IMG/VR virus record: IMGVR_UViG_3300024503_000485
Coordinates: 62,001 to 126,000 of that record
Direction: 5' to 3' (one strand)
DNA: 64,000 nt
The position numbers and the translations under genes were made by a program. The notes beneath the pieces were generated by a model. That model saw nothing but the letters and a program-made list of their open reading frames with translations, searched no databases and was not told where the DNA came from. Each line of letters opens with the position of its first letter. Positions within the stretch are counted from its first letter, which is position 1. Below are positions 28,091 to 64,000 of the stretch, in pieces.

Positions 28091-29022
28091 TCTTTTTTCC
28101 CTAATACGTGATTTACTACTAGTGTAGTTATGTCTTCGTTCATAGACATAATGTTTTCGTTTGATCTATTAATTCTTTCATCTGGGAAGATTCTAATAGG
28201 ATCGTATTCTCTGTTTACTTCTCCCATATCTAAAATATCAAAGTCAGGGCAGTTAGGGAACGATACGTTAATAGGGAAAGTCCCGCCAGTTACTACAACT
28301 GCTTCTTTATTCATAGAATATGCTAAATGCTGGCCCAAGCTATCGCAACCTAAAAACTTATCTGCATATTTGATAACTGCGGCCCACACTCTAATGTTTA
28401 CATTTTCTGGTACAGCAACTTCGTCTTTAAGTTTTGCATCAGAAAAATCAACTTTAAATTCGCTCATCATAATAACACCAAAGTCATTATTTTGCAATTT
28501 TTTAACAATTGATTTAACATCACGTAATTCAAAACTTCTTGAAGTTCTGTCAATTAGTGTTTCGTCGATGTATTCAATACCACGACCAAAAGGTTGAAAC
28601 ACAACTACTTTTTCTTTTTTAAGTTTTTTCTTAACATCACTGACCATTTGTCGGCCATATAGCATTTCTTCTTTGCTTAGACGCAGGGTTGGTCTAGGAA
28701 GATCTCTAATACCTTTATTGTTAACTTGAATGTCAAACGCTTGTGCAATTGAACATTGTTGATTGTAATATTCCCAAATTCTATATGGTTCTGTGGTAAC
28801 AATTTCGCGATCTTTTAAATAATCTTTAAAAAGATTTTTATGCCATACATCGTATGTTCTATTATCAAGGGTAGGATGACCCTTAAAAATATCTGTTCCA
28901 CCTTCGCAGACAATAATAAAATCTTTATCGTCTGATTCTTTTTCATATAGTTCAAAAGCAGGAATAGATGCAATCATTCTACCTGCTCCACCGTTAATAA
29001 AAAATGCTTTGGATCTGCTCAT
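28087..29022 (-). CDS. GT9 (heptosyltransferase)-like GT-B glycosyltransferase
   Basis: NGGAGR.IASIPA N-terminus, VVFQPFG, and AAVIKYADKFLGCDSLGQHLA...VVVTG GT9 signature. Confidence 0.75.
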   Translation of the reverse strand: MSRSKAFFINGGAGRMIASIPAFELYEKESDDKDFIIVCEGGTDIFKGHPTLDNRTYDVWHKNLFKDYLKDREIVTTEPYRIWEYYNQQCSIAQAFDIQVNNKGIRDLPRPTLRLSKEEMLYGRQMVSDVKKKLKKEKVVVFQPFGRGIEYIDETLIDRTSRSFELRDVKSIVKKLQNNDFGVIMMSEFKVDFSDAKLKDEVAVPENVNIRVWAAVIKYADKFLGCDSLGQHLAYSMNKEAVVVTGGTFPINVSFPNCPDFDILDMGEVNREYDPIRIFPDERINRSNENIMSMNEDITTLVVNHVLGKKE

Positions 29023-29031
29023 TTAAACTCC

Positions 29032-29086
29032 AAAAAAATAGCCTTGTACTTCATTATATAGTCATATAACGAAAAGCACAAGGCTA
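29032..29086 (-). terminator. Long terminator hairpin with U7 tract containing a sigma70-like promoter
   Basis: TAGCCTTGTGCT..TCGTTATAT-GACT-ATATAATGA-AGTACAAGGCTA-T7; TTGTGC-N17-TATAAT inside. Confidence 0.7.
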
Positions 29087-29105
29087 ATCTTGGTTTAAAT
29101 TTTAA

Positions 29106-29750
29106 TTATAGAGCAGGTTGAATTGGATAAGGAATTTTCCAATGATCTACGCCAGCATACTTTGTTTCAATTGTTCTTAAAAACTCAGCATGTTGCTCAA
29201 TCTTTTCTAGCTGTTCTGGCAAATAGTTACCTGAACTTGCAGCTTCCTCAAAAGTTTTTAATTGAGACTTTTGAGATTCAAAGAACGAAGCTCTAGTGAT
29301 AGCATGGTTTCTATATCTTGGCATTATCCAAGAACTAGTTGCTGCATCCCATTTTGCATCGTTGGTGTAAAATGGTTGTGTGCAACAGCCGTGCTCGTCA
29401 TCATAATGATATTCGTACTTTTCACCTGTTGGAAGTGTTTCTACATAGTTTGGTACAGGACTTTGCTCATATTCGTGAGTAATATAAGATGCTAAAAATG
29501 GATTTTGATCAGCGTCGAGTACAACTTGAATATGACCCTCTGGGTCTAGATTCTCTTGAGCAATTTTCCATTTTTCTAATGCTTCTAAGGTTTCTTCACC
29601 TTCGTCCCAAGCAAACACAGCACCCGTAGCTTTTACTACTCTGATGAGCAGATATCTAGGGCCTGTATAAACACAATCAACCGTTCTGTTTAATTTTGTT
29701 GTGGTCTTGTATGGCTCATCTGGCAATACTGCTTTAAATGCTTTTCTCAT
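29106..29750 (-). CDS. Hypothetical protein, possible tail fibre assembly chaperone
   Basis: Start reassigned to MRKAFK (ATG 29750, AAGGA SD); C-terminus FLRTI...WKIPYPIQP resembles Tfa-type chaperone ends; follows adhesin-like genes. Confidence 0.5.
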   Translation of the reverse strand: MRKAFKAVLPDEPYKTTTKLNRTVDCVYTGPRYLLIRVVKATGAVFAWDEGEETLEALEKWKIAQENLDPEGHIQVVLDADQNPFLASYITHEYEQSPVPNYVETLPTGEKYEYHYDDEHGCCTQPFYTNDAKWDAATSSWIMPRYRNHAITRASFFESQKSQLKTFEEAASSGNYLPEQLEKIEQHAEFLRTIETKYAGVDHWKIPYPIQPAL

Positions 29751-29754
29751 GTTT

Positions 29755-30747
29755 TTAATCCTTAGGTATAAAGTTAATTCTAACTGCACCCATGCCGCCT
29801 CTCCAACCGTTATCTCTAACGTCACCGCATGGTGTTGCTGGATGTCCGCCTATGCCAATTGGCCAAAATGGTTGACAACCTTGTACATCGTAGCATCCGC
29901 ACGATCTAATTGTAGTATAACAAGTAGTCCATGGAATACCTCTAACTGGGCTTCGACTCATGCCGTTAAGTGCATTAATAAACTGGTGATATCCCATTCC
30001 TGACCATTCAGAGAATCCATTATCACCTTCTGTTCCGTATGAAACAACGCCACCATCGCAGGCAAATAGTCCTGGAGGAACAGCTACGTGGTAATGAGTT
30101 GAACATGGGCAGTTACCATAACCAGTCCAGAATGTTACACAGCTAAATCCGCCGCGTTTATTAATATCTCCGCCGTAGGCTTCTGCACAACAGCTACCAG
30201 TTCCTGATCCATAATTACAAATAATACCACAACATCCGTTTGAATAGTTGGTATTACAGAAATTACCTGCTACAAAGCAACAGAACATAACGCCGGATGG
30301 GTTACAGAATGTTGTGCCTCCACGGCCGCCTTGTGTACAAATACATCCGTTAGTTGCTGCACCAGTTAATGGAACACGGCCAAACCAGCATAAGCAGGTT
30401 GCTTCTGAACAACCACGGAAACATAGTGTATCAGCATTGTTACAGCTCTTTCCAATGTATCCACAGACATAACAGCCTGCAACTACGCAGAAACATTTTC
30501 TTGCCCATGCTCCTGGATTTCCTGGAACACCGTGTCCACAGCAGCACATACGTGCTCCTGAACCACCAGCACCCCAAACGTCCATGATAACACGACCTGT
30601 TTGGCAGGCTACCCAGCAAAATCCGTTTACATAGTTATTGTATTCAGCTGACGGTGTATAAAACCAAATTTGTCCTTTTTCAAGATTTGATTCATCCCAT
30701 TCAATTTGGTTTAATTTATTTTCTACTAATGTTTTTAAGGTAGCCAT
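29755..30747 (-). CDS. Cysteine-rich glycine-rich-domain protein 3 (adhesin-like)
   Basis: DVWGAGGSGARMCCC...GGMGAVRI; 34 Cys in 330 aa by manual count; start MATLKT. Confidence 0.75.
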   Translation of the reverse strand: MATLKTLVENKLNQIEWDESNLEKGQIWFYTPSAEYNNYVNGFCWVACQTGRVIMDVWGAGGSGARMCCCGHGVPGNPGAWARKCFCVVAGCYVCGYIGKSCNNADTLCFRGCSEATCLCWFGRVPLTGAATNGCICTQGGRGGTTFCNPSGVMFCCFVAGNFCNTNYSNGCCGIICNYGSGTGSCCAEAYGGDINKRGGFSCVTFWTGYGNCPCSTHYHVAVPPGLFACDGGVVSYGTEGDNGFSEWSGMGYHQFINALNGMSRSPVRGIPWTTCYTTIRSCGCYDVQGCQPFWPIGIGGHPATPCGDVRDNGWRGGMGAVRINFIPKD

Positions 30748-30748
30748 A

Positions 30749-31978
30749 TTAGTACGCATTGCCTCCGTCAGTTGGAATGTATTTAATTCTTACCATACCC
30801 ATACCACCTCTCATAGCATGGTCACGAACACCCGGACATGGGTGAGGTGCTGCACCAGGTACTCCGTAAGGAACATAATGCATACATCCTTCCATTTCGT
30901 AGCATCCGCAAGCACGGTCTGAACGCCAGCAACGAATATTTACTAGGTGTCCAGGTTGTCTAGATAAACCAGTTAATCCGTTTAGGTGATGTGGTTTAGT
31001 GCTTCCTGACCAGTTAACCATTGGTGAATCATTTTCAGTTGTGTATGTATATGATCCGCCGTCGTTGGCAAAAATACCCGGAGATGTAGTAATGTGATAC
31101 TGGAACATACATGTACACATTGGTAAACATCCTTGCCAGCTTACACAGCTAAATCCGCCACAGCAGTTAATATCGCCGCCGTAGCCGCAGGCTTGGAATG
31201 AAGCTGAACTGGGCCAATCACTTGGATTCCAGTTACAGATCATACCGCAAGCAGAGCGAGAAATATCACACATATTGTGTTGTGTACTTAATTTTGTTCC
31301 GCACCATGCGTTGGTTATGTAGCAAGAGTATGGTGATTTATCATCAATACAATAACTAATACCACCACGACCACCCTGAGAACATAAACAGCCATTTGAT
31401 GCACCTGCTGCACAGCAAATACCCCAGTTAGCGCAGCCTTGGCCGCCATAACGTCCACATTGGCCGCCTTCAAATTGAATGCCGCCACCGGCATTGCCGT
31501 ACGGATCGCCTGCCATTGGGTTTCCGCCACCTTGGCCCCATCCCCACGGATTGTTGCCTCTAAATGATTCTTGTCTATTTGGTTCTTGTCCGCCTTCCCA
31601 TACAGGTTTAGGAGCACAACCAAACCAGCATACGCAGGTTGCTTCCGAACATCCTCTAAAACAAAGTGCTGAAGAGTTGTTGCATGAACGACCTACATAC
31701 CCGCAAACATAGTTTGAAGGACATACACAAATACATTTTTTTACATAGGCTGCTGGGTTTCCAGGTAATCCCACACCGCAGCAACACATTTGTGCGCCTG
31801 ATCCAGACGCACCCCAAATTTCAATAATTGCTTTACCGCATCCTGGTGGTTTCCAACAGAAACCATTACAGAATGATGTGTACATATTGCCGTCTGAGTA
31901 AACCCAGATACGACCTTTTTCTAAGTTATCTTCCCAGGCTAATTCACGATTACCTAATAATTGTGTTAATGTTGACAT
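30749..31978 (-). CDS. Cysteine-rich glycine-rich-domain protein 2 (adhesin-like, with Gly-rich insertion)
   Basis: EIWGASGSGAQMCCC...GGMGMVRI; 40 Cys in 409 aa; start MSTLTQ by TAATG overlap. Confidence 0.75.
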   Translation of the reverse strand: MSTLTQLLGNRELAWEDNLEKGRIWVYSDGNMYTSFCNGFCWKPPGCGKAIIEIWGASGSGAQMCCCGVGLPGNPAAYVKKCICVCPSNYVCGYVGRSCNNSSALCFRGCSEATCVCWFGCAPKPVWEGGQEPNRQESFRGNNPWGWGQGGGNPMAGDPYGNAGGGIQFEGGQCGRYGGQGCANWGICCAAGASNGCLCSQGGRGGISYCIDDKSPYSCYITNAWCGTKLSTQHNMCDISRSACGMICNWNPSDWPSSASFQACGYGGDINCCGGFSCVSWQGCLPMCTCMFQYHITTSPGIFANDGGSYTYTTENDSPMVNWSGSTKPHHLNGLTGLSRQPGHLVNIRCWRSDRACGCYEMEGCMHYVPYGVPGAAPHPCPGVRDHAMRGGMGMVRIKYIPTDGGNAY

Positions 31979-33006
31979 TAGTAACCGCCTCCTAGTCTTG
32001 AGCAATTCTGTTCATATATTCCAGAACCTCTATATGTTAATCTAATTGCACCGTGGCCGCCTCGTCTGCCGTGGTCACGAACGTCTGGACATGGAAACGG
32101 AGGTCCACCGGCTACACCATACGGCATATGAACTTGACAACCGTTTTGTTCATAACATCCACATGATTGAGTGCCTGAATAGCAAGTGTGCCATGGCATA
32201 CCGCCACTTGGCCATTTACCTACGTTGTTAATTGCATATTGTTGATTGTAGTTACCCATTCCTGACCATTCAGAATATTCTGGGTCTGCATCGTTAATAT
32301 ACGATAAGTAACCACCTTGTGTACTATACACGCCAGCAGCAAAAGGAATGTAAACTTCAGTTTGGCAAGGACATGATGGATAGCAACCTTTAAAGTGTAC
32401 ATATCCAACGCAACCGCAGCAGTTAATGTCGCCACCGTAGCCGCAGGCAATCCATGCGCCTGGACATTGGTTACACACAATTGCGCAGTTATCGCAACCT
32501 GTTGGAGAATTATAACGTGTTGTACAGAATGTACAATATAGATAACAGCAATAAGCAGATGTTGAAGTTGAGCATATAGCAATGCCTCCACGTCCGCCTT
32601 GAGCACACATACATCCGCCGGTATAACCGCAAAGGTCTCGAGCATTACCCCATCTTAGATATGACGGGTCGCTGCATCCTGAAAAACATAAGCTGTGAGA
32701 GTTACAAGACATTGATGGACAAGCACAAATATAGCTGCCACAAAAAACTGCAATAGTCTTTTTAGAATATGCCGGAGCATTTCCTGGAAGGCCAAAGCCA
32801 CAACAGCACATACGAGCGCCGCTGCCTGCTGCACCCCACATCTCAATAGTTAGTGTTCCACAACCAGGTGATGTCCAGCAGTACAACATGTCAGATCTAA
32901 TACATGAATACATGCCGGTGGGTGAGACCGTCCAGACCTTGCCTTTTTCAAGATTATCCTGATTGGCTGTAATCTCTCTTGTAGATAATAGGTCTGATAA
33001 TTTCAT
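31978..33006 (-). CDS. Cysteine-rich glycine-rich-domain protein 1 (adhesin-like)
   Basis: EMWGAAGSGARMCCC...GGHGAIRL; 37 Cys in 342 aa. Confidence 0.75.
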   Translation of the reverse strand: MKLSDLLSTREITANQDNLEKGKVWTVSPTGMYSCIRSDMLYCWTSPGCGTLTIEMWGAAGSGARMCCCGFGLPGNAPAYSKKTIAVFCGSYICACPSMSCNSHSLCFSGCSDPSYLRWGNARDLCGYTGGCMCAQGGRGGIAICSTSTSAYCCYLYCTFCTTRYNSPTGCDNCAIVCNQCPGAWIACGYGGDINCCGCVGYVHFKGCYPSCPCQTEVYIPFAAGVYSTQGGYLSYINDADPEYSEWSGMGNYNQQYAINNVGKWPSGGMPWHTCYSGTQSCGCYEQNGCQVHMPYGVAGGPPFPCPDVRDHGRRGGHGAIRLTYRGSGIYEQNCSRLGGGY

Positions 33007-55124: not shown

Positions 55125-55150
55125 CAAAAAGCCCCTTGCGGGGCTTTTTG
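55125..55150 (-). terminator. Intrinsic terminator after major capsid gene
   Basis: CAAAAAGCCCC-GCAA-GGGGCTTTTTG. Confidence 0.9.
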
Positions 55151-55174: not shown

Positions 55175-56344
55175 TTAAGCAAACTTCAAGTTAGCTGTTG
55201 TAACAGCAACTTTAGCTAGGTAGTCAGCTGCATTACCTAGAGAAGAAGCTGTGTTAGTTAGTTCTACATAACCATAACGTGTCATGAAGCTAACTACTGG
55301 TTCAAATGTTGATGGATCCAATACAACACCGCTGCTCATCAATGGAATGTATGGGCAGTAGAATGCTGGAGCATCAGATTCGCTAGAACCTTTGTAACCA
55401 ATTAGAACGTCATCGCTTGTAGCGTATGTGTTAACAAACACTCTCATTGCGCCGTTCAATGTACCAACAAACTTAGTGTTTGTAGGTGCTTCGAATGTAC
55501 CTTCTGTTGTTCTTGCGAAAGCAGAAGTTGTAGCACTTTGTAGAAGTGTCAATGTTGTTGGGCTAACAACTGCATAGTTACCAGCACCACGACGTGTACG
55601 CTGAGCGATTAGGTTAGAAGCACGGTTGATTTGAACAGCTAGAGCAGCGTGTTCGTCACCAACGAATGTAGCAGTACCAGAAACGCTGTTTTGATCGTAT
55701 GTTAATACGGTACCAGCTAGGCTGTTTAAGCTACCAATAACTTCTTGATCAATCTCAGCAGTAATTTCTTGTGCCAATGCGGCCATGATTTCTGCTTCGA
55801 TATCAATACCTTGTTGAGCTTGTGCATCTTGTGCAGCTTCGAAAGTCCAGCGAGCTGATAACTTACGAGTTTTAGCTTCAACGGTTTGTTTCAAGATTTG
55901 AATGCTTAGTCTGTTACCAGCTACGCCTTCAAGAGCTGCTGTAGAAGCTGCCTTGTCGTTAGCTGCACCAGAATAGCCTTCAGCAATCTTGAATGGGCTT
56001 AGTGCTTCGTCACCGGCTGTAATATCAGTACCACTTGTGCTGTTAAAGCTATCTGCATAGCGAACACGCAATGTGTGGATCTGACCAACTGGTCCAGTCA
56101 TAGGCTGTACGCCTACCAACTCGTTAGCAATAACGGTTGGCATAACACGTCTGATTACTGGAAGAATGACGCGATTTAGTGTTGCAACGTTACCGGCGGA
56201 AGTAGCACCAGCTGTAGCACTTTCTGCTAGATACTTGCGAGTATTTTCTAGAGTAGTTGCCATAACGGTACGCTTGTTACCTTGTAGGCCTTCTAATAGT
56301 GCCTCTTTGGTTTCCGACCAGCGTGACTCGAGTAGTTGTGACAT
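55175..56344 (-). CDS. gp23: Major capsid protein (T4 gp23-like)
   Basis: GVQPMTGPVG, VEAKTRKLSARW, LAQEITAEIDQE, IAQRTRRGAGN, FYCPYIPL, FMTRYG. Confidence 0.97.
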   Translation of the reverse strand: MSQLLESRWSETKEALLEGLQGNKRTVMATTLENTRKYLAESATAGATSAGNVATLNRVILPVIRRVMPTVIANELVGVQPMTGPVGQIHTLRVRYADSFNSTSGTDITAGDEALSPFKIAEGYSGAANDKAASTAALEGVAGNRLSIQILKQTVEAKTRKLSARWTFEAAQDAQAQQGIDIEAEIMAALAQEITAEIDQEVIGSLNSLAGTVLTYDQNSVSGTATFVGDEHAALAVQINRASNLIAQRTRRGAGNYAVVSPTTLTLLQSATTSAFARTTEGTFEAPTNTKFVGTLNGAMRVFVNTYATSDDVLIGYKGSSESDAPAFYCPYIPLMSSGVVLDPSTFEPVVSFMTRYGYVELTNTASSLGNAADYLAKVAVTTANLKFA

Positions 56345-56354
56345 ATAGTTCTCC

Positions 56355-57452
56355 TTAAACTTTTAGTCCCGCAAGCCTGCGGATGTCAAATATTTCAGCG
56401 GTTTTCTCTTCGCTTCCGCTGATTGATTGTGCCTTTTCTTTATTGCCTGTAACTTCTTTAGCCTCTGTGAGTGCTTTCTTCGCCGGTGCTCCACCATCCA
56501 TAACGGCTGGTAGATACTTGTCGAAAGCTCCATGTAATTTCTCAGTTTGAACTGATTCTAGTAGTTCGCGCATAACTTCTCGCTTATCACCTGATAATGG
56601 GCCAAGCAATTCGCTCATAACGTCCTTGCGTTTAGCTTCATTAACGATTTTAGCAATTTGTGCTTCTTTGCTCTCTACTAGTTTTTGTGATTCTGCAACA
56701 ACTTTAGCTGCTTCTTCAACTTCTTTAGTTTTTTGTTCAACAACTTTTAGAAGTTTAGCTGTCTCTGATTTCTCATTGAGATAGCTCGTTGCAAATTCGC
56801 TAGCAAAACTTTCAAAAATTCTGCGACCAAAGTCATTCTTGCGGGCTGCTTCGATGTCTTCACGTAACTGAGTCATTTCAGAACGTAGGCCTTTGCTTAC
56901 GGTTTCTTCAATGATTTTAGCTGAACGTGCAATAAATTCCTTGCGAACTTGTTCAAACTTAGCCTTGCTTTCGCGGACTAGTTTAACTTTAGTTTCTGCA
57001 AGATCTTTCTTATCTTGATGGAATTCTGCAATTTCCTTTGCTAGAGCATCAACGATAAATGATTCTAATTTAGAGACATTTTCTGCAACTGACTTGCGAT
57101 CTGCGTGTAGTTCTGACACTTCCTTTTGTAGATTGTTAAAAATAAATGACTCAAATGCTTTCGCATCAGTAGTCATTTTCTTAACGTACTTGGCTTTAGC
57201 TTCAATCAATCCTTGACGATCTTCTGCAAGTTCTGATAACTCAGCTTGTAAACGATCAACTAACATCGATTCAACGGCTTCAACCATTGCGGACTTGTCA
57301 TGCTCATATTTTTGAGCAAACTCTTCACGTAGTGCAGCAGTGACTTGTTCACGGTTTTCTTGAATTCTGCTATCCCAAGCAGCTTCAATTTCCGATTTAA
57401 TTTCTTCGGAAATCACATTGTTCTCAAACAATTGTTTTACGATATCTAGCAT
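56355..57452 (-). CDS. gp22: Prohead scaffold/core protein (gp22-like)
   Basis: Coiled-coil, E/K-rich; FGRRIFESF motif; between protease and MCP. Confidence 0.85.
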   Translation of the reverse strand: MLDIVKQLFENNVISEEIKSEIEAAWDSRIQENREQVTAALREEFAQKYEHDKSAMVEAVESMLVDRLQAELSELAEDRQGLIEAKAKYVKKMTTDAKAFESFIFNNLQKEVSELHADRKSVAENVSKLESFIVDALAKEIAEFHQDKKDLAETKVKLVRESKAKFEQVRKEFIARSAKIIEETVSKGLRSEMTQLREDIEAARKNDFGRRIFESFASEFATSYLNEKSETAKLLKVVEQKTKEVEEAAKVVAESQKLVESKEAQIAKIVNEAKRKDVMSELLGPLSGDKREVMRELLESVQTEKLHGAFDKYLPAVMDGGAPAKKALTEAKEVTGNKEKAQSISGSEEKTAEIFDIRRLAGLKV

Positions 57453-57468
57453 GTGATTCTCCTACTGG

Positions 57469-58095
57469 TTATTTGAGCCTTGCGATTATTCGCTTTAGGC
57501 TCTCTGCTAAGTATTTCTGTGCCTTTGGGTCGCCTTTAACTTCTTGTGCTATTCTATAAGCCTGATATCCACCTGTATTGTTCATCAAGTGTTCATAAAC
57601 TGGTGTTGGATAAGCGCCTGGTGCGCTTGGTTGTGCTACTACATCAACCGTAATAATTTCAAATCCTTGAACGTTTCCGCTGTTATCAACTTCTCCAGAT
57701 CCACGACTTGAAACTCCAAGTTTAACTCCCGACTCCAACATAGTCTTAACTAATTGACCCATTGGAGTAGGAAGAATTTTTAGTTTTCCGTAGCCGTTAG
57801 GGCCGTCCATCCACATTTTAGTAATCATGTGTGATACACGGTCGAGGTTGATACGTAAATCCTGAGGATGATCAACTTCCCCTAGCACGGAGTATCCGCC
57901 AGAGATTTGTTCGTTGAGCGTCTTGACAGCCCTGCCAATTTCTTGAGAAGAATAAACACGCTGATTTGCATTTCGGATATCGCCCTGGATGCAAATCCCG
58001 TTTAGGAAGAGCGACTTTTTGTCGCCCTCACCTTCGCTCTCTAAGACAATCTTAGCCTGGTCAAAACTCAGATGTTCTGCTAAGGTAGTTTTCAC
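57469..58095 (-). CDS. gp21: Prohead protease (gp21-like)
   Basis: GICIQGDIRNANQRVY, GEVDHP, VSH, LPTPMG, GVSSRGSG, DVVAQPSAPGA; GTG start. Confidence 0.95.
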   Translation of the reverse strand: MKTTLAEHLSFDQAKIVLESEGEGDKKSLFLNGICIQGDIRNANQRVYSSQEIGRAVKTLNEQISGGYSVLGEVDHPQDLRINLDRVSHMITKMWMDGPNGYGKLKILPTPMGQLVKTMLESGVKLGVSSRGSGEVDNSGNVQGFEIITVDVVAQPSAPGAYPTPVYEHLMNNTGGYQAYRIAQEVKGDPKAQKYLAESLKRIIARLK

Positions 58096-58109: not shown

Positions 58110-59000
58110 TTATCTACGACCACGGAAAAGGCTTTGCTTGTTATCGGCGCTTTCGCCGGAACCTTTTTTCTCAGCACCATGACCTGGTTCTTTTGATTTG
58201 AAACCAGTTTTACCAGCGTTACCGCCTGGTACATTCACGTTGCCTTTAGCATCTGGATTGTCGCTTACCTTACCTTTTTCAAGACCATTGCCTTTTAATG
58301 CGCCTTGGTTAGCGTAAGTAGCTGCATCTTCTTTAGAAGAAAGGATGTTAGCAGTTGTACCGCCCATATCATTCTTCATGTTGTCGATTGTAGACTTTGT
58401 GTTGTCAGATTTTTCAGCAGCACCTTTCTTTTCAGCACCGTGACCTGCTGGAACTTTTTCTACATATTCACGAACGGTTTCTAAATCAAAACCTTCTTCT
58501 TCAGGCATATCGTCACTGCCTTCTTCGTCACCAAACTCGCCTTGGGCTTCTTCTTCGCCTTTTAGCTGCGCAAATTTAGCTTGTAGTTCGTCAACAATAG
58601 ACTCTAAATCTTGCATAATTTCTTCTTCAGATTGCTCGCCGCCTTCTTCGTCACCCATTTCTAGGTCACCTTCTAGGTCGTCTGTTGGATCACCGCCCAT
58701 TTCAGGCTCGTCGCCACCTTCAAAAGCAACATCTTCGAAGTTTTCATCTAGATCATCTTCGTCGCTATCTTCTTCGGAAGCTTCGTCAACTTTGTCTTCT
58801 TCTGCATCATCATCTTGTGCAGCTTCGTCCATGTCTTCGTCTTCTTTATCTTCTTCTTCTGCGATTTCAGATTCAATTAAATTTTCGTAGATTTCGCGTG
58901 ATGCTTGTACTACGTATTCGTGGAAAAGCTCATCAGCTTTTGCTTGATCGTCGTTAACCAAATGCTCTAGCATTTGGCTTAATAAATTCTTATCTGCCAT
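58110..59000 (-). CDS. Highly acidic prohead core protein (gp67/gp68 position)
   Basis: D/E-rich disordered; position between portal and protease; TAAATA at 59044-59039 and AAGGAG SD. Confidence 0.65.
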   Translation of the reverse strand: MADKNLLSQMLEHLVNDDQAKADELFHEYVVQASREIYENLIESEIAEEEDKEDEDMDEAAQDDDAEEDKVDEASEEDSDEDDLDENFEDVAFEGGDEPEMGGDPTDDLEGDLEMGDEEGGEQSEEEIMQDLESIVDELQAKFAQLKGEEEAQGEFGDEEGSDDMPEEEGFDLETVREYVEKVPAGHGAEKKGAAEKSDNTKSTIDNMKNDMGGTTANILSSKEDAATYANQGALKGNGLEKGKVSDNPDAKGNVNVPGGNAGKTGFKSKEPGHGAEKKGSGESADNKQSLFRGRR

Positions 59001-59066: not shown

Positions 59067-59765
59067 TTAAATGACGTTTTTTTGATTCGTTTGGTCAGAA
59101 TATATAGTTCCGGGGAACTTTTTTTCAAATTCTTCAAAACTTATATGTTTTAAATTTGGTAATGTAGGGCCAAGTTTTTCTGGAATAAATGATCCCGATT
59201 CTACTACTCTGTAAAACTGATTACCTCTCCAATCTCTAATCGTTTTTTCTGTTTGACTTAGCCAATTACCGTGGTAAGTGGGCGGTTCAAAACTCTTTTT
59301 ATAGTTATATGTATCGGCATAAACATTGTTAAATTTACCTTCTATGCCTTCATAATCAAATCCAAAAATATATATGTCTTTGTGGCCGCAATCGCAAGCA
59401 AAATAAAGAGCTGTTGGACCGCTACTCCATCCCCTATGCGGATGGAAAAAGTTAACTCCGGACTTAGTATTAACTCCTTTGTTTGGATTTGTCCATACAG
59501 AATGTGTTCTGTGATACCCGCTGGCTATAATTTCGTTGACCATTTTTACGTCAACTGCAATTAAAAAATCGGGTTCAAATTCTCTGTAAAGTGCGTTACA
59601 ACCAAATGTAGTGCCGTATTCTGGCAGGGCAGCATGATTTAATCTTAGTCTGCTACGCCCATTACCAAGTACGAAAGCTGGTTCATTCCGCGGGTTGCTG
59701 TGCTTCAACTGGAGTACCGTACATCTGTTGTATAAACGAACGCTCTGATTGTTCTTCCATTTCAT
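59067..59765 (-). CDS. Maf/DUF115-like (sialyltransferase-fold) putative glycosyltransferase
   Basis: AFVLGNGRSR, TFGCNALYR..PDFLIAVD, SSGPTAL..A...G.KDIYIFGFD; true start uncertain (possibly TTG 59708). Confidence 0.6.
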   Translation of the reverse strand: MKWKNNQSVRLYNRCTVLQLKHSNPRNEPAFVLGNGRSRLRLNHAALPEYGTTFGCNALYREFEPDFLIAVDVKMVNEIIASGYHRTHSVWTNPNKGVNTKSGVNFFHPHRGWSSGPTALYFACDCGHKDIYIFGFDYEGIEGKFNNVYADTYNYKKSFEPPTYHGNWLSQTEKTIRDWRGNQFYRVVESGSFIPEKLGPTLPNLKHISFEEFEKKFPGTIYSDQTNQKNVI

Positions 59766-59931
59766 GAGCTTCGCTTTGTTGGCGCAGTTGGTTGATTTGT
59801 CGTAAAGTTAATCGAATTTTACGAGTATCTGATTTTTTTAAGACAGAACTATCTCTGGAAGCGTCATATCTTTGATCGTTTCCAAAGTCGTTTGTATTGT
59901 CGTTAAAATAGAAAAATTCACGTAGAAGCAT
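59683..59931 (-). CDS. Small hypothetical head-module protein
   Basis: MLLREF start; DTRK.RLTLRQINQLR; TAAATA 5 nt before ATG. Confidence 0.7.
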   Translation of the reverse strand: MLLREFFYFNDNTNDFGNDQRYDASRDSSVLKKSDTRKIRLTLRQINQLRQQSEAHEMEEQSERSFIQQMYGTPVEAQQPAE

Positions 59932-59948
59932 AATAATATTTACCTAAG

Positions 59949-61646
59949 TTAGGCTGCTGGAGCAGCTTCAGGTTCAGCCCCTGGTTCAGCTGCTTGTGCT
60001 GCTAAATCGTCGGGTGCTTCTGCGTCTTGTCCACCCGCTTCTGCCGCCATACCTCCCGGTGTTACGCCAGCCGATCTTAAGTCTCCAGCAGCATCATCCG
60101 TAGGTGTTAGGTTAGAACCATTTTCTTCGCGCCATAATGATTCATTTTCTTTAATTTCTTCTTCAGTTAATCCTAAGAAGCGTTTTAGTGCAAAACGTTT
60201 GCTTAGATGAGGAATTTGTGAAACTTGTGAATATGTTGCTGCTCTTGCTGTGTCAAGTTCTGATTGACGATAAGCAGCAAAGTTTTGTGGAGTATTAAAT
60301 TTTAATTCAAATAAACTATTGTCAATGTTTACGCCCTGCGCAGCCATCCAAAGTTTAAATTCAACATCAAATGTTTGCGCTATCATTGATTGTAAACGTT
60401 TGCAATATTCATTAAATCGTAATTCTTGAATATATGCCGTTCCAACTTTTCCGTCGGCAATAGTATTACTTGCTTCTTCAATACCTGTTGGCAAGTATGC
60501 TGCTGGTATTCTTAAAGCACGGAAAAGTTTGTTTGTAAAGAATCGTAAATCTGTAATTTCACCTAGATTAGTACCACCCGGTAGTGTTTCAACTTTAGAA
60601 CCACGACCTTCAGCAGTTTGTGGGAAGAAGTAATCTTCGTTTACACTTAGTGGATTATAACTAGCGTCAACTAAATTATTGCCACCACCGCTGGCGCTAG
60701 GAATACGTCTTTGTTGGATTTCGTTTTTAACACGTTCAACAAAGCTCATAGCCATGTGTGCTGGCATATTTCCAACGTCTACATAGAAAATACGTCTTTC
60801 TGGAGCACGTTGTATACGATAGATAATAATAGCATCTTCAAGCAATTCTTTTTGCTTGTAGACTTTGAATACAGATTCTAAAATTGAATTGCCAAAAGGA
60901 TAATTGTTGTCTAATCCTTCGCTTAAACTAATATGCACAACATTTTTTGCATCAACCGTTATTTCGTTTACTTGATTGTGAAATCTAGTGCCAGGAGGTC
61001 TTGCTGCATCCCCAACAAATCCTCTACCAAATCCACCGCCCGATACGGTATAACTACCAGTACCACTAGGTTGTGTATTTGATGTAGCATGAGGAGTTGT
61101 TGCAATTAGATTTGCAAAGTTAAAATTAATATCTTTTAAAACATATTGCTCGGGAATTTTTCCTTCGCTTTCGTTAACGATAATTTTTGTAACCTTAGCA
61201 GGATCAACATACAACCATTTTTTAGTTTCTGGATCTCTAACAAAGAAACAATCTCCGTATTTGAAAGAATTTCGAACTATACGAAAAATTCTTGTGTCAA
61301 ATTGATTTTGTTTTGCCCACTTCTGTAGGCTTTCTTTAATTAACTTAACTTCGGTTCCGGTTGGTTTGCCTTTAAATGATAGTTGAAACGCTGTTCCATT
61401 TTCTCTATCTTTTTGTGTACAAAATTCAGCTAAGATATCTAGAGCTGCGTTAACTTCGCTGTCCATATCCATAGTGTCATATTGCATATATCGTTCGACA
61501 CGATTTGGATTACCTGCATATACGTCAGGCAAGAATGATGAATAATTAGTTCTTGCAGGTCCTGGTCGCCCTCTACTGCCAATAGGACTCATTGTTCCTT
61601 GTTGGTTATCGATGTTGACAGGAGTAAAATATTTTTTCCAACTCAT
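59949..61646 (-). CDS. gp20: Portal protein (gp20-like)
   Basis: EDAIIIYRIQRAPERRIFYVDVGNMP, EDYFFP..EGRGS.VETLPGG.NLGEI.D, ELRF motifs. Confidence 0.96.
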   Translation of the reverse strand: MSWKKYFTPVNIDNQQGTMSPIGSRGRPGPARTNYSSFLPDVYAGNPNRVERYMQYDTMDMDSEVNAALDILAEFCTQKDRENGTAFQLSFKGKPTGTEVKLIKESLQKWAKQNQFDTRIFRIVRNSFKYGDCFFVRDPETKKWLYVDPAKVTKIIVNESEGKIPEQYVLKDINFNFANLIATTPHATSNTQPSGTGSYTVSGGGFGRGFVGDAARPPGTRFHNQVNEITVDAKNVVHISLSEGLDNNYPFGNSILESVFKVYKQKELLEDAIIIYRIQRAPERRIFYVDVGNMPAHMAMSFVERVKNEIQQRRIPSASGGGNNLVDASYNPLSVNEDYFFPQTAEGRGSKVETLPGGTNLGEITDLRFFTNKLFRALRIPAAYLPTGIEEASNTIADGKVGTAYIQELRFNEYCKRLQSMIAQTFDVEFKLWMAAQGVNIDNSLFELKFNTPQNFAAYRQSELDTARAATYSQVSQIPHLSKRFALKRFLGLTEEEIKENESLWREENGSNLTPTDDAAGDLRSAGVTPGGMAAEAGGQDAEAPDDLAAQAAEPGAEPEAAPAA

Positions 61647-61660
61647 TTAATTAATGATCC

Positions 61661-64000
61661 TTAAGCAGAATATACATTGCCCGTCATAGACTTTTGTGTA
61701 GTAAGCTGCTTGTCGTTAACTTCTAATAATTTTCGATTTATCATAACTAATAGATCCATCTTAGTATTTAATAGCGATAACTGCGATTCAGCTGTTTCTT
61801 GAGTTGCCTTAGCGGGTGTAGGTGTTGTTGCACCAGTTCTTGGTTGAGCAGTTGCTGCCGCTGGTGCTGGCGCTGCTGGTTGTTGTGATACACTAGTTTG
61901 AGCTGTTGAGGTCGATGGAGTTACGCTGCCACCTTTGGCAAATTGTCCAGAATAAGAATTTACTTTTCCTAAAATTTCTTCTCCAATTGCGCCTTTTCGT
62001 CTTATGTCTCCACCGGCAATTTGGCTTGTTGCTAACAAGTTTGCTTGTTCTTGAGATAATCCAGAAGTGCCCATACCAAGTTTGCTAGCCATTCCGGCTT
62101 GACCTTTTTTCATATACCAAGCACTAACTTCCGCAGCAACCTGTGGATCGTTAACTAAATCTGGATTTTTAACTAATCTATCATCACCGTAGATGGCTTT
62201 TGATGCAGCGGCATAATTATTTTTACCAGTTAACTGAATAAAACCTCTGCCTCTATATTTCCATCCATCTCCGGGTTCCGTATTCCCCATTTGACGACCC
62301 ATTGCTGTGCCGGAACCATACATCATTTCGCCCATTTTTTGCTGGTCGCCTTTGATAGCATTTAGTTCTGCATCGGATTTTCCAGCAGCCCTACTACCAA
62401 ATATTTTTCTAATACGATCGTTAGATGTATTAGCATAATTCATATTTTCAGAAATACTCTTACCGCCAGTTTCTTTCATTATGTTGCCTTTGACAGCAGC
62501 AACATAAGCAGGATCAGTAATTCCTTGTTTTTTAAGAGCTGCTTCAACTAGAGCCATGTTTTTCTGTTGATCTTGATTTAACGGTCCAGCAGCTCCTGGG
62601 GCCGGTCCTCCTGTTGGTGCAGCGGGTGCAGTAGCAGGTGTGGCAGGTGAAGGAGCTCCTCCTCCCATAGTTTTTCTTTCTTTAAAGGCTTTAAATGTTT
62701 CTTCAGGACTTGTGTAATTAATTTTCTTCTGTGCTTCTACTTGAGCTTCTGTTGTTTTAGTTGCCTCTTGAGCCGCAGCGGTAGCAGCTTGTGTTGTTTT
62801 AGTATGTTCTTGAGTAGCTTTCTTATCTTCCTCGTAAGTTCCACGTTCTATTGCTTTTTGTTTTCTCTTATCGTCTCTATCTTTTTCTTTAGCGTCAAGT
62901 TCTTTACGTTGGTCATCCCTTAAGGCTCTACGTCTATCAGCTTCTGCTTTACTAATACCACCAATTGCATTTGGTATTTTCTCTAATAAAGAATCCATCC
63001 AATCTTGCAAAGTCATCCATAAACGTTGGAAATTATCTTTTAAAGCATCAATAATTGTTCCAAATGTCCAACCACTATCATATAATTTCTTAAAGAGATA
63101 AACAACACCTGCAACCGCTGCCGCTACTGCAATAAATGGCGCTGCGGCCGCTAGTACAGGAGCTACGGTTGCCCATACTGCTGATGCCAGTGCTGTTAAA
63201 CCTAAAACATTAACTGCTTGAACTAAATTTGCAGCAGCAGTAATGGCGCTTGAAACTACTATAAGTCCACCTAGTATTCCCATTCCTATAGCTACTTCTT
63301 TTGCATGGTCTGCCACCCAAGTCAATCCTTCAATTAATATAGGAGTTAGTTCTTCTATGGCCGCTGTAAATGACTGCAACATTTTATCTAACAACGGACT
63401 ATTAGCCAATGCTGCCATAAATTTATTTGAAAGGTCAGCTAACTTTTCCATGTTACTTTTCATTTTAGCAGGATCAAGACCTTTGGCGCCTTCTGTTAAT
63501 TGTTTTTGTCTGTCTAATTCTTGTTGTGCCGCTTGTGCTCTTAGACTTCCGTTATCTTTTTCTGCCCTGTTGGCTCGATCTAAATTAGAAACAATACCCT
63601 TGCCCCATTTTTCAGCATCATACGTGGCCAACGTTACTTGAGCAGCATTTTTTTGACTAGCAATAGCACCAGCATTGAATGCTTCGTCAATCTTAAATGC
63701 TCCTTCTCTAGTCATTGTTCCTGATTGTCTAATATCACGAGAAGCCTGTAGCAATGCTTTTGCGGCCTGCGGATTTGTAATCATTAATTGCTGAGCTGCT
63801 TCGCTGTTTAATGATCCTGTGGCTAAAATAGTTTGTGCTGCTTGTTTTTCAGATTCACTCATGCTATCCATTAGCATGTTTAAATTTTTAGCACCTTCTT
63901 TTCCAACTTTAGCCTGTAATATTCTAAACTGCGCATCGGCTTGTCTTGCTTCTTGTTCTCTTTGAAGTATTTCTTTATTCTTACCAGTAAGTTTTGAAAC
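61661..64000 (-). CDS. Tape-measure-like protein with GH19 (chitinase/lysozyme-like) domain; 5' end outside window
   Basis: Frame open to 64000; helical region, hydrophobic TM-like segments, then KETGG...GDGWKYRGRGFIQLTGKNNY...NPDLV GH19 motifs. Confidence 0.8.
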   Translation of the reverse strand, partial: VSKLTGKNKEILQREQEARQADAQFRILQAKVGKEGAKNLNMLMDSMSESEKQAAQTILATGSLNSEAAQQLMITNPQAAKALLQASRDIRQSGTMTREGAFKIDEAFNAGAIASQKNAAQVTLATYDAEKWGKGIVSNLDRANRAEKDNGSLRAQAAQQELDRQKQLTEGAKGLDPAKMKSNMEKLADLSNKFMAALANSPLLDKMLQSFTAAIEELTPILIEGLTWVADHAKEVAIGMGILGGLIVVSSAITAAANLVQAVNVLGLTALASAVWATVAPVLAAAAPFIAVAAAVAGVVYLFKKLYDSGWTFGTIIDALKDNFQRLWMTLQDWMDSLLEKIPNAIGGISKAEADRRRALRDDQRKELDAKEKDRDDKRKQKAIERGTYEEDKKATQEHTKTTQAATAAAQEATKTTEAQVEAQKKINYTSPEETFKAFKERKTMGGGAPSPATPATAPAAPTGGPAPGAAGPLNQDQQKNMALVEAALKKQGITDPAYVAAVKGNIMKETGGKSISENMNYANTSNDRIRKIFGSRAAGKSDAELNAIKGDQQKMGEMMYGSGTAMGRQMGNTEPGDGWKYRGRGFIQLTGKNNYAAASKAIYGDDRLVKNPDLVNDPQVAAEVSAWYMKKGQAGMASKLGMGTSGLSQEQANLLATSQIAGGDIRRKGAIGEEILGKVNSYSGQFAKGGSVTPSTSTAQTSVSQQPAAPAPAAATAQPRTGATTPTPAKATQETAESQLSLLNTKMDLLVMINRKLLEVNDKQLTTQKSMTGNVYSA

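What the first reader, a model, noticed from the sequence alone, without database searches (positions are those of the whole stretch)
59067..59765. Glycosyltransferase-like gene inside the core head operon
Seen: a Maf/DUF115-like protein lies between portal and prohead core, overlapping a small late gene. Established: Maf proteins transfer nonulosonic acids to flagellin; capsid glycosylation is known in some actinobacteriophages. Inference: it glycosylates capsid/portal proteins. Together with the tail cassette, this suggests separate head and tail decoration enzymes.
Basis: partly seen in the sequence, partly recalled or inferred. Interest (0 to 1): 0.6.

Follow-up and report, generated by a model that had tools for sequence, protein, structure and literature searches.

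The report
Maf-like sugar transferase in phage head operon
A large group of uncultured river and marine giant phages keeps a small enzyme, related to the bacterial enzymes that attach sialic-acid-like sugars to flagella, between the genes that build the phage head; it may sugar-coat a virion protein, but this has not been tested.

Summary
The gene is real. It most likely starts at TTG 59708 (213 aa) rather than ATG 59765.

**Family.** It is a single-domain, phage-only member of the Cst-II (GT42) / Maf / MptE (DUF115) fold group.
- Best structural match: Maf catalytic domain (Z 13.2). MptE kinase scores 10.1 and Cst-I 9.5.
- A profile of 96 diverse relatives hits only GT42 sialyltransferases in the PDB (E 1.6e-9).
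- A 40%-identical homologue passes Pfam's PF01973 threshold.
- The GT42 catalytic histidine is also absent. The invariant D53, S95 and D118 align with conserved Maf-profile columns; I infer these are the positions mutagenesis found essential in Maf.

**Position.** The order portal, small gene, this gene, acidic protein, protease, scaffold, capsid holds in all 80 related viral contigs examined. Cultured relatives such as Serratia phage BF lack the gene.

**Possible donor.** Both near-complete relatives (330 and 335 kb) encode KdsA and a KdsB-like enzyme, which points to CMP-Kdo. The window's own genome lacks them at the matching site.

**Verdict.** It is probably a CMP-ulosonic-acid transferase made together with the head proteins. 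The acceptor is unknown, and capsid glycosylation is inferred from gene position only.

The parts
59067..59708 (-). Target gene, most likely form: 213 aa from TTG 59708 to stop 59067-59069. A single-domain Maf/GT42/DUF115-fold protein.
   Evidence: The collection's own record of this protein is this 213-aa form (P0009, 100% identity). Homologues are 211-218 aa. AF2 model: pLDDT 78.9, pTM 0.80. Fold matches.
59709..59765 (-). Possible 19-codon N-terminal extension if ATG 59765 is the start (232-aa form). It lies inside the 3' end of the upstream small gene.
   Evidence: No strong Shine-Dalgarno sequence precedes either candidate start. Homologues use an ATG equivalent to about 4 codons upstream of the TTG.
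59649..59666 (-). Motif G15-N16-G17-x-S19-R20 after the first beta strand. It aligns with GNGPS of Cst-II and GPS of Maf, the nucleotide-binding loop.
   Evidence: Invariant in 71 of 71 clade sequences. Aligned to Cst-II residues 1-34 and to Maf G46-P47-S48.
59550..59552 (-). D53, an invariant acidic residue at the end of the third strand. It aligns with the D/E column of Maf-type proteins.
   Evidence: Equivalence to MmMaf E324 / CbMaf D272 (bioRxiv 10.1101/2020.06.03.131540) is inferred from the profile alignment, not checked residue by residue on the structure.
59418..59426 (-). S95-S96-G97, inside the motif G-W-S-S-G-P. It aligns with T131-S132-G133 of Cst-II and with the T/S column of Maf.
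   Evidence: Invariant. Alignments.
59355..59363 (-). G116-F117-D118, the G-x-D motif shared with Cst-II (G152-I-D154), Maf (invariant G-x-D) and MptE (GMD).
   Evidence: Invariant. Alignments.
59265..59354 (-). Lid-like loop, residues 119-148. It carries the invariant N127, N128, Y130, N135, Y136, T144 and N148 and is predicted with low confidence.
   Evidence: pLDDT is below 50 for residues 121-147. HMMER aligns the loop to the Cst-II lid region 155-191. Conservation. The Cst-II lid orders only when CMP binds (PMC4202792).
59683..59931 (-). Small 82-aa gene (P0002) directly upstream, overlapping the target.
   Evidence: phrog_13986, E 2.7e-9. Present in every related locus whose flank reaches that far, and also in Serratia phage BF, where the target is absent. 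It is therefore a head-module gene, not a dedicated partner.
59949..61646 (-). T4-type portal protein (565 aa).
   Evidence: Pfam Portal_T4 E 7.3e-108; phrog_213.
58110..59000 (-). Very acidic 296-aa protein directly downstream. It occupies the position of the BF gp252 'virion structural protein'.
   Evidence: (phrog_15696, weak).
57469..58095 (-). Prohead protease (S77, gp21-like).
   Evidence: Pfam Peptidase_S77 E 1e-24; phrog_207 E 3.6e-57.
56355..57452 (-). Scaffold protein (365 aa).
   Evidence: phrog_10922 E 2.9e-81. Position matches the BF scaffolding protein.
55175..56344 (-). Major capsid protein (gp23 family).
   Evidence: Pfam Gp23 E 3.2e-99. 81% nucleotide identity over 175 nt to the Serratia phage BF capsid gene.
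55125..55150 (-). Strong terminator-like hairpin after the capsid gene. No terminator-like site was found on the coding strand between portal and capsid.
   Evidence: 11-bp stem, 6 GC pairs.

Best explanation
The gene encodes a minimal, phage-specific enzyme of about 213 aa. It consists of the catalytic domain of the Maf / GT42 sialyltransferase / DUF115 fold and nothing else.

Proposed mechanism (inferred):
- It binds a CMP-activated 2-keto-3-deoxy sugar acid. Kdo, taken from the host or from phage KdsA/KdsB, is the leading candidate; a nonulosonic acid is the alternative.
- Binding uses the GNG-S, C-N, S-S-G and G-x-D motifs under a flexible, Asn/Tyr-rich lid.
- It transfers the sugar to a hydroxyl group. 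D53 (with E59 and D118) would take the role played by the acidic residues of Maf, not by the histidine base of Cst-II.

The gene is co-directional with portal, core, protease, scaffold and capsid genes, with no terminator-like site found between them, and this order is fixed throughout a large jumbo-phage clade. The most likely acceptor is therefore a protein present during head assembly, such as a head, core or other virion protein.

Shown: fold, family relationships, conserved residues, synteny, and KdsA/KdsB in relatives. Inferred: the donor, the chemistry and the acceptor.
For: **Fold**
- VIA-align against 48,161 PDB representatives gives only four chains at Z>=8. They are Maf 5mu5 (Z 13.2, rmsd 3.6 A, 174 residues aligned, model 3-200), MptE-HPPK 8sd5 (10.1), Cst-I 2p56 (9.5) and SteA 9hmy (9.1).
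- The top Foldseek hits are GT42 sialyltransferases and Maf.

**Sequence**
- The profile of 96 diverse homologues hits only Cst-II (E 1.6e-9), Pasteurella GT42 (8.5e-8) and Cst-I (1.1e-6) in the PDB.
- hhalign against a bacterial Maf-type PF01973 profile gives 95.5% probability, E 1.6e-8, over 160 columns. D53, S95 and G116-x-D118 fall on the conserved D/E, T/S and G-x-D columns.
- Mutating an acidic residue, a Ser and an Asp abolishes Maf activity. I infer these are the positions that correspond.
- Homologue P0133 (40% identical) passes the Pfam PF01973 threshold, 49.9 against 34.6 bits.

**Signs of an enzyme**
- About 45 invariant, mostly polar residues persist across sequences 47-100% identical.

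**Context**
- 80 of 80 IMG/VR loci keep the same gene order. In 60 of them both portal and protease are visible.
- Both near-complete relatives carry kdsA (passes the NCBIfam equivalog cut-offs) and a kdsB-like cytidylyltransferase at one syntenic site.
- No WaaA-type Kdo transferase was found in these phages, and the gene is single-copy in each.
- Maf enzymes can use CMP-Kdo.

**Distribution and expression**
- The family appears to be phage-specific. Only 22 loci were found in 185,579 species genomes; all lie on MAG contigs, none in a cultured isolate.
- Contigs from four river metatranscriptome libraries cover the gene without a mismatch.
Against: - No biochemical or virion data exist, and the phage is uncultured.
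- The protein itself fails the Pfam thresholds for both MptE-like (15.8 against 34.6 bits) and CST-I (15 against 25).
- hhalign scores the archaeal MptE profile almost as well as the Maf profile (94.5%, E 7.4e-8), though over fewer columns.
- The GT42 catalytic His is absent and the Cst-II phosphate-binding tyrosines are not matched by the alignment.
- The protein lacks the N- and C-terminal acceptor-binding domains of Maf.
- The window's own genome (62% complete) lacks kdsA/kdsB; at the syntenic site only about 280 bp separate the flanking orthologues.
- No NeuB was found in any of the four viral records searched (G000-G003).
- Distant homologues are not in head operons.
- Eneladusvirus phages assemble the same head module without this gene.
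- The mapping onto Maf E324/D415 comes from a profile alignment, not from a structural superposition.
- The RNA-library contigs could come from DNA carry-over.
Confidence: 0.4

Rival explanations
1. It is a CMP-sugar-dependent glycosyltransferase, but the acceptor is not a virion protein. It could be a host surface glycan (as with Cst-I/Cst-II acting on lipooligosaccharide), a phage-made oligosaccharide that is then carbamoylated, or a small molecule. In that case the head-operon position only provides late, abundant expression.
For: - The sequence profile is closest to the GT42 enzymes, which act on glycans rather than proteins.
- The protein has no acceptor-binding domains.
- More distant family members sit among auxiliary genes. 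HTVC008M gp007 lies next to a Nol-like carbamoyltransferase and 2OG-Fe oxygenases. Others lie near a GGDEF/EAL protein, a nucleotide-sugar epimerase or a methyltransferase.
- The kdsA/kdsB cassette in G001 encloses an OmpA-family gene.
Against: - The position inside the head module is invariant in 80 of 80 loci while the portal diverges to about 60% identity. That is hard to explain if only timing mattered.
- The family lacks the GT42 His base and resembles Maf, a protein O-glycosyltransferase, most closely in structure.
Confidence: 0.25
2. It is an MptE/thiamin-pyrophosphokinase-like kinase that transfers pyrophosphate from ATP to a small molecule such as a pterin or thiamin-like compound.
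For: - MptE-HPPK 8sd5 is the second-best structural match (Z 10.1, 139-142 residues).
- Thiamin pyrophosphokinases score Z 7-9.
- hhalign to the archaeal MptE profile gives 94.5%, E 7.4e-8.
- Pfam's nearest model by name is MptE-like.
Against: - The residues invariant in 14 archaeal MptE proteins (T-D-L-D-G, H-A-H-G-D-N, G-G-F-T-D-G-D-R) fall in gaps or opposite unrelated residues of the target family.
- The match covers only residues 10-125 and omits the conserved lid and C-terminal part.
- No kinase in the PDB is hit by the family profile, whereas GT42 enzymes are.
- No folate or thiamin pathway genes were noticed nearby.
Confidence: 0.07
3. It is a non-catalytic head-assembly or prohead-core protein that merely retains an old enzyme fold.
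For: - It sits where T4 has the core genes 67 and 68, between a gp67-sized gene and an acidic core-like protein.
- The catalytic His of GT42 is missing.
Against: - All nucleotide-binding motifs and a dense set of polar residues (N, D, E, R, S, T, Y) are invariant, including in the flexible loop.
- There is no (L/I)-x-E protease site or T4-like capsid-targeting sequence at the N terminus.
- Homologues function outside head operons.
Confidence: 0.08

Closest known systems
Maf (motility-associated factor) flagellin nonulosonic-acid O-glycosyltransferases; central Maf_flag10 / PF01973 domain, e.g. Magnetospirillum magneticum Maf (PDB 5mu5)
   Same: - It is the best structural match (Z 13.2, 174 residues).
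- The profile-profile match has E 1.6e-8.
- The acidic residue after strand 3, the Ser/Thr in the glycine-rich loop and the G-x-D aspartate are all conserved.
- There is no histidine base.
- Maf enzymes transfer CMP-activated sugar acids, including Kdo, to Ser/Thr of a structural protein that then self-assembles.
   Different: - Maf proteins have about 450-800 aa and three domains. This protein is the central domain alone (213 aa).
- It fails the Pfam threshold itself.
- GPSL is replaced by G-N-G-x-S-R.
- The lid carries its own invariant N-N-x-Y...N-Y...T-x-x-G-N-W motif.
- It is encoded in a phage head operon, not next to flagellin and Pse/Leg synthesis genes.
CAZy family GT42 sialyltransferases Cst-I / Cst-II (Campylobacter jejuni) and the Pasteurella multocida enzyme (PDB 1ro7, 2p2v, 9c08)
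   Same: - These are the only significant PDB sequence matches of the family profile (E 1.6e-9 to 1e-6).
- The size is similar and the architecture is also a single domain.
- Shared motifs: GNG-S, C-N, (T/S)-S-G and G-x-D.
- Both have a flexible lid over the donor site.
- Z 9.4-9.5 over 166-178 residues.
   Different: - The general base His188 (Cst-II) / His202 (Cst-I) (PMC4202792) has no counterpart. No histidine is conserved anywhere in the clade.
- Tyr156 and Tyr162 are not matched by the alignment.
- The helical insert 35-118 of Cst-II is missing.
- GT42 acceptors are lipooligosaccharide sugars.
Archaeal MptE 6-hydroxymethyl-7,8-dihydropterin pyrophosphokinase (PDB 8sd5) and thiamin pyrophosphokinases
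   Same: - They share the Rossmann-like core, the G-x-G-x-S loop and the G-x-D motif.
- Z 10.1 for MptE-HPPK and 7-9 for the thiamin pyrophosphokinases.
- hhalign E 7.4e-8 over 115 columns.
   Different: - The invariant acidic/His motifs of MptE (TDLDG, HAHGDN, GGFTDGDR) are absent.
- The C-terminal third and the lid do not align.
Virion glycosylation in actinobacteriophages (Freeman et al. 2023, cited in PMC12619734)
   Same: Phage-encoded glycosyltransferases decorate capsid and tail-tube subunits.
   Different: Those phages infect mycobacteria and are unrelated to this clade. From memory, their enzymes belong to other glycosyltransferase families that use NDP-sugars and lie downstream of the structural genes; I did not check this here. 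No Maf/GT42-like enzyme or sugar-acid donor is involved, and no such system is known for jumbo phages with a T4-type head.

Membership tests
Pfam PF01973 (MptE-like / DUF115 / Maf_flag10) | Score above Pfam's gathering threshold (34.6 bits) | tested here: not met
   The target scores 14.5-15.8 bits; 11 of 28 close and 11 of 96 diverse homologues give sub-threshold hits. However, homologue P0133, a tandem duplication 40% and 37% identical to the target, scores 49.9 bits. Membership of the wider superfamily therefore holds by transitive homology.
Pfam PF01973 (MptE-like / DUF115 / Maf_flag10) | Shared fold with the solved members (Maf 5mu5, MptE 8sd5) | tested here: met
   Z 13.2 and 10.1, ranks 1 and 2 of 48,161 chains. 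hhalign 95.5% and 94.5%.
Maf flagellin glycosyltransferases | Catalytically required acidic residue, Ser and Asp (MmMaf E324/D415; CbMaf D272/S334/D357) | tested here: inconclusive
   D53, S95 and D118 are invariant and align to the conserved D/E, T/S and G-x-D columns of a Maf-type profile. Identity of those columns with the published residue numbers is inferred; no residue-level structural superposition was available.
Maf flagellin glycosyltransferases | Three-domain architecture with N- and C-terminal domains (or a GlfM adaptor) that bind the acceptor | tested here: not met
   The protein is a single 213-aa domain, and most relatives are 185-260 aa. The upstream 82-aa gene also occurs in phages that lack the target, so it is not a dedicated adaptor.
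Maf flagellin glycosyltransferases | Genomic association with flagellin and Pse/Leg/Neu biosynthesis genes | tested here: not met
   The gene sits in a head morphogenesis operon. No NeuB was found in four phage records. Two relatives carry KdsA and a KdsB-like gene instead.
CAZy GT42 (Cst-I/Cst-II) | Significant sequence similarity to characterised members | tested here: met
   The family profile hits Cst-II at E 1.6e-9, 9c08 at 8.5e-8 and Cst-I at 1.1e-6. The Pfam CST-I model stays below threshold on single sequences (best 2.6e-5).
CAZy GT42 (Cst-I/Cst-II) | Catalytic general-base histidine (His188 in Cst-II, His202 in Cst-I) | tested here: not met
   HMMER places His188 opposite the variable Y/F145. 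No His is conserved in 71 clade sequences.
CAZy GT42 (Cst-I/Cst-II) | CMP-sugar donor-site motifs (GNGPS, C-N, T-S-G, G-I-D) and a lid | tested here: met
   All aligned counterparts are invariant: G15-N16-G17, S19, C37-N38, S95-S96-G97 and G116-x-D118. The roles of these residues in Cst-II are recalled from Chiu et al. 2004 and were not re-read here.
MptE-type pterin pyrophosphokinase | Invariant motifs T-D-L-D-G, H-A-H-G-D-N and G-G-F-T-D-G-D-R of archaeal MptE | tested here: not met
   These motifs are invariant in 14 archaeal sequences. In the hhalign alignment they face a gap or non-conserved residues of the target family.
Any of the above | Enzymatic activity with the family's substrates | not testable with these tools
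   Requires expression and assay.

The most novel reading that the evidence does not exclude
A very abundant clade of environmental jumbo phages with a T4-type head O-glycosylates a head or core protein with Kdo or a related sugar acid during prohead assembly. The enzyme is a stripped-down Maf-like transferase that is a fixed part of the head morphogenesis operon, and some members bring their own KdsA/KdsB to supply CMP-Kdo. To my knowledge this would be the first virion glycosylation system of this type in phages outside the actinobacteriophages, and the first Maf-type protein glycosylation outside flagella.
Probability: 0.3. Interest if true: 0.8.

Novelty: new variant of a known kind. Interest (0 to 1): 0.58.

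Why it matters
If the enzyme decorates virions, sugar-acid glycosylation of capsids would be common in river and marine phage communities. More than 4000 sequence clusters and at least 599 IMG/VR contigs carry the gene. Such decoration would affect virion surface charge, stability, adsorption to particles and recognition by grazers or immune systems.

The protein is also the smallest known version of the Maf/GT42 catalytic domain. That makes it a convenient model for how these enzymes work without a histidine base, and a possible tool for attaching Kdo-type sugars to proteins.

Even if the acceptor turns out to be something else, the finding gives a testable function to a large family of 'hypothetical' phage proteins (PHROG 30607).

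Tried and rejected
- **Single-sequence and close-homologue searches of the PDB** gave only spurious ankyrin-repeat hits on the G-P-T-A-L...G-H-K-(D/E)-I stretch and a weak Cst match. Diverse homologues were needed.
- **NCBIfam** gave nothing.
- **tblastn against 50,697 phage records** found only Pelagibacter phages HTVC008M and Mosig. No cultured phage carries the head-operon form.
- **Residue-level alignment to Maf 5mu5** through the PDB sequence search failed. I used a profile of bacterial Maf-type proteins instead.
- **The first attempt to collect archaeal MptE proteins** sampled a phylum of small genomes without the family. A second phylum worked.
- **T4 late-promoter motif TATAAATA**: one match in 64 kb, fewer than chance, and not near the gene. 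Sigma-70-like sites occur at or below chance.
- **Processed prohead-core protein**: I found no (L/I)-x-E cleavage site or T4-like targeting peptide at the N terminus. The capsid protein does have L-A-E at residue 41, in the position expected from T4 gp23 (that comparison is from memory).
- **The 'moraphage' paper on aquatic jumbo phages** (PMC12619734) describes a different lineage, related to Lak phages and with predicted Bacteroidota hosts. I could not link it to this clade.
- **No complex prediction was run.** I do not claim a specific binding pair, and neighbouring genes alone are not reason enough.
- **Lee et al. 2011 on Cst-II** was not held, so the donor-site roles of Asn31, Ser132 and Asp154 rest on memory.
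Full report
**What is there.** The window is bases 62001-126000 of a 219,444-bp IMG/VR virus record that CheckV rates 62% complete. Its right end carries a T4-type head module on the minus strand:
- a tape-measure-like protein with a GH19 lysin domain (61661-63877)
- the portal (59949-61646; Portal_T4, E 7e-108)
- an 82-aa gene (59683-59931)
- the flagged gene (59067-59765)
- a very acidic 296-aa protein (58110-59000)
- the S77 prohead protease (57469-58095)
- the scaffold (56355-57452)
- the gp23-type capsid protein (55175-56344)

A strong terminator-like hairpin follows the capsid gene, and no such site was found on the coding strand between portal and capsid. The only nucleotide similarity to known phages is a 175-nt stretch of the capsid gene. 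It is about 80% identical to 350-kb Eneladusvirus-type phages of Serratia, Erwinia and Yersinia.

**Gene limits.** From ATG 59765 the frame gives 232 aa and overlaps the small gene by 83 nt. The collection's own record of this protein is 213 aa, which corresponds to TTG 59708 and a 26-nt overlap. Close homologues are 211-218 aa and start a few codons upstream of that point. I take 59067-59708 as the likely gene. In more distant relatives the two genes are separated by 25-190 nt, so the overlap is a local feature.

**The gene is real and constrained.** The word search found 4293 homologous clusters, all unnamed. The exhaustive search found 1428 representatives at 50% identity, 780 of them with E<=1e-10, mostly single-domain proteins of 185-260 aa. 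I ran that costly search because Pfam, NCBIfam and the word search had left the protein without a family. In 71 distinct sequences from the head-operon clade (47-100% identical), about 45 positions are invariant and most are polar.

**Fold.**
- An AlphaFold2 model of the 213-aa form has pLDDT 78.9 and pTM 0.80. Only residues 121-147 and the last seven residues are uncertain.
- Foldseek ranks GT42 sialyltransferases and Maf first.
- VIA-align, run both on Foldseek's list and exhaustively on 48,161 PDB representatives, gives Maf 5mu5 first (Z 13.2, rmsd 3.6 A, 174 residues, model 3-200 on the Maf central domain 267-513).
- Next come MptE-HPPK 8sd5 (10.1), Cst-I (9.5), Cst-II (9.4) and SteA (9.1-9.6), then thiamin pyrophosphokinases (6.4-8.7). 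Nothing else reaches Z 8.
- In BFVD and the ESM Atlas the nearest models are small uncharacterised proteins of tailed phages.

**Sequence relationships.**
- The protein and its close relatives give only recurrent sub-threshold hits to Pfam CST-I and MptE-like.
- A profile of 96 diverse relatives (A2) hits, in the whole PDB, only Cst-II (E 1.6e-9), the Pasteurella GT42 enzyme (8.5e-8) and Cst-I (1.1e-6).
- One relative, a tandem duplication whose halves are 40% and 37% identical to the target, passes Pfam's PF01973 threshold.
- hhalign gives target family against Maf 95.5%, E 1.6e-8, 160 columns. Against MptE it gives 94.5%, E 7.4e-8, 115 columns. Maf against MptE gives 99.1%, E 1.7e-18.
- The family is therefore a separate branch of this superfamily, roughly equidistant from the two PF01973 groups and detectably related to GT42.

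**Active-site reading.**
- The motifs G15-N16-G17-x-S19, C37-N38, S95-S96-G97 and G116-x-D118 are invariant. They align with GNGPS, C-N, T-S-G and G-I-D of Cst-II. As far as I recall from Chiu et al. 2004, these form the Cst-II CMP-sialic acid site; I could not re-read that paper.
- The uncertain loop 119-148 aligns with the Cst-II lid, which orders only when CMP binds (PMC4202792). It carries invariant Asn, Tyr and Thr residues.
- The GT42 general base (His188 or His202) is missing. HMMER puts it opposite a variable Tyr/Phe, and no histidine is conserved in the clade.
- In Maf, activity depends on an acidic residue, a Ser and an Asp (MmMaf E324 and D415; CbMaf D272, S334 and D357). In the profile alignment the target's invariant D53, S95 and D118 fall on the conserved D/E, T/S and G-x-D columns of the Maf profile. 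I infer, but could not verify by superposition, that these are the same positions.
- The residues invariant in archaeal MptE (TDLDG, HAHGDN, GGFTDGDR) face a gap or unrelated residues.

**Genomic context.**
- A scan of IMG/VR found at least 599 contigs with a relative. In the best 80 (47-100% identity) the order portal, small gene, target, acidic protein, protease, scaffold, capsid is kept wherever the contig reaches.
- 60 loci show both portal and protease. The other 20 are cut by a contig end, and none contradicts the order.
- Across this set the portal falls to about 60% identity, the capsid protein to about 81% and the target to 47%.
- Serratia phage BF has the same module (portal 47%, capsid 67% identical) with the small gene but without the target.
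- More distant family members lie elsewhere. HTVC008M gp007 sits by a Nol-like carbamoyltransferase and 2OG-Fe oxygenases. Others sit among replication or auxiliary genes.
- In 185,579 prokaryotic species genomes only 22 loci were found. All are on MAG contigs, several obviously phage. The family is therefore effectively phage-specific.

**A possible donor pathway.**
- The 93%-complete relative G001 (330 kb) encodes a Kdo-8-phosphate synthase that passes two NCBIfam equivalog cut-offs. It also encodes a KdsB-like cytidylyltransferase whose best matches are all CMP-Kdo synthetases, just under the cut-off.
- A 335-kb marine contig, filed inside a Neomarinimicrobiota MAG, carries the head-operon gene and the same kdsA/kdsB pair (69% and 45% identical) at the same syntenic site.
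- The window's own genome has the flanking genes, but only about 280 bp lie where the cassette would be.
- No NeuB and no WaaA-type Kdo transferase were found in the four viral records searched (G000-G003), and the target is single-copy in each.
- Maf enzymes are known to accept CMP-Kdo, which I expect a Gram-negative host to supply for LPS synthesis (general knowledge; the host is unknown).
- This makes Kdo a reasonable donor candidate, but the link is circumstantial.

**Occurrence and expression.** The exact sequence is held by about 20 river metagenome and metatranscriptome runs. Contigs from four RNA libraries cover the gene and its neighbours without mismatches (4301 letters were laid, within the operators' limit). 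Contigs show neither strand nor level, and DNA carry-over is not excluded.

**Conclusion.**
- 'Glycosyltransferase-like' is well supported at the level of fold, motifs and relatives.
- The MptE-kinase alternative is disfavoured.
- That the enzyme glycosylates the capsid or portal remains an inference from an unusually rigid gene position. It is strengthened somewhat by the KdsA/KdsB genes of relatives. It is weakened by the absence of those genes here and by family members outside head operons.
- I put about 0.9 on membership of the Maf/GT42/DUF115 superfamily, about 0.55 on a CMP-sugar-acid transferase, and about 0.3-0.4 on a virion protein as acceptor.

Noticed in passing
window 26264-28090 (-), with neighbours 28087-33006: A NodU/Nol-type O-carbamoyltransferase (Pfam Carbam_trans_N/C; phrog_1601, E 2e-170) lies between giant tail-fibre-like genes (2153 and 3071 aa). 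Next to it are five ORFs with no Pfam family, three of them paralogues (phrog_4205). A second carbamoyltransferase copy lies outside the window at G000 39.6-40.6 kb. The same enzyme sits three genes from the HTVC008M homologue of the target.
   Followed up: partly
L094:8295-10257 (G001) and L150:8043-9543 (G271:C57): A kdsA and kdsB-like cassette sits at one syntenic site between replication genes in two near-complete jumbo-phage genomes. In G001 an OmpA-family gene lies between the two. The cassette is absent from the matching site of the window's genome (G000, about 44.9-45.1 kb).
   Followed up: yes
L096 / L097 (PBPT01000082.1, 153 kb; PBPT01000016.1, 335 kb): Two large contigs filed in a 'Candidatus Neomarinimicrobiota' MAG from the Red Sea carry the full phage head module. 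They look like jumbo-phage contigs binned with a bacterial genome, and the shorter one duplicates part of the longer.
   Followed up: partly
window 61661-63877 (-): A 738-aa protein upstream of the portal has a hydrophobic, Ala-rich central part, coiled-coil-like stretches and a GH19 (chitinase class I / endolysin) domain at residues 537-594. It looks like a tape-measure-like or ejected lysin. Relatives have a VgrG3-like C-terminal domain at this position (L003).
   Followed up: no
window 58110-59000 (-): The 296-aa protein downstream of the target is extremely acidic in its first 170 residues. Its C-terminal half carries two copies of a P-x-G-H-G-A-E-K-K-G motif. It diverges fastest in the module, down to about 35% identity.
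   Followed up: no
P0133 (metagenomic protein, 435 aa): This family member is a tandem duplication of the whole domain. Only its first half passes Pfam PF01973.
   Followed up: partly
window 59067-59100 (C-terminal tail of the target): Close homologues (>=60% identity) share a conserved, predicted-disordered C-terminal tail ending Q-K-(T/S)-x-I. It is lost in more distant head-operon members and could be a docking peptide.
   Followed up: no
window 57832-57975: In all four RNA-library contig sets the summed word depth is 10-50 times higher over part of the protease gene than over the target. This may reflect reads from related phages sharing this conserved stretch rather than expression level.
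   Followed up: no
NC_020484.1 (Pelagibacter phage HTVC008M): tblastn finds three separate places in this genome that match the target family, so this phage holds several copies. Only gp007 was inspected.
   Followed up: partly
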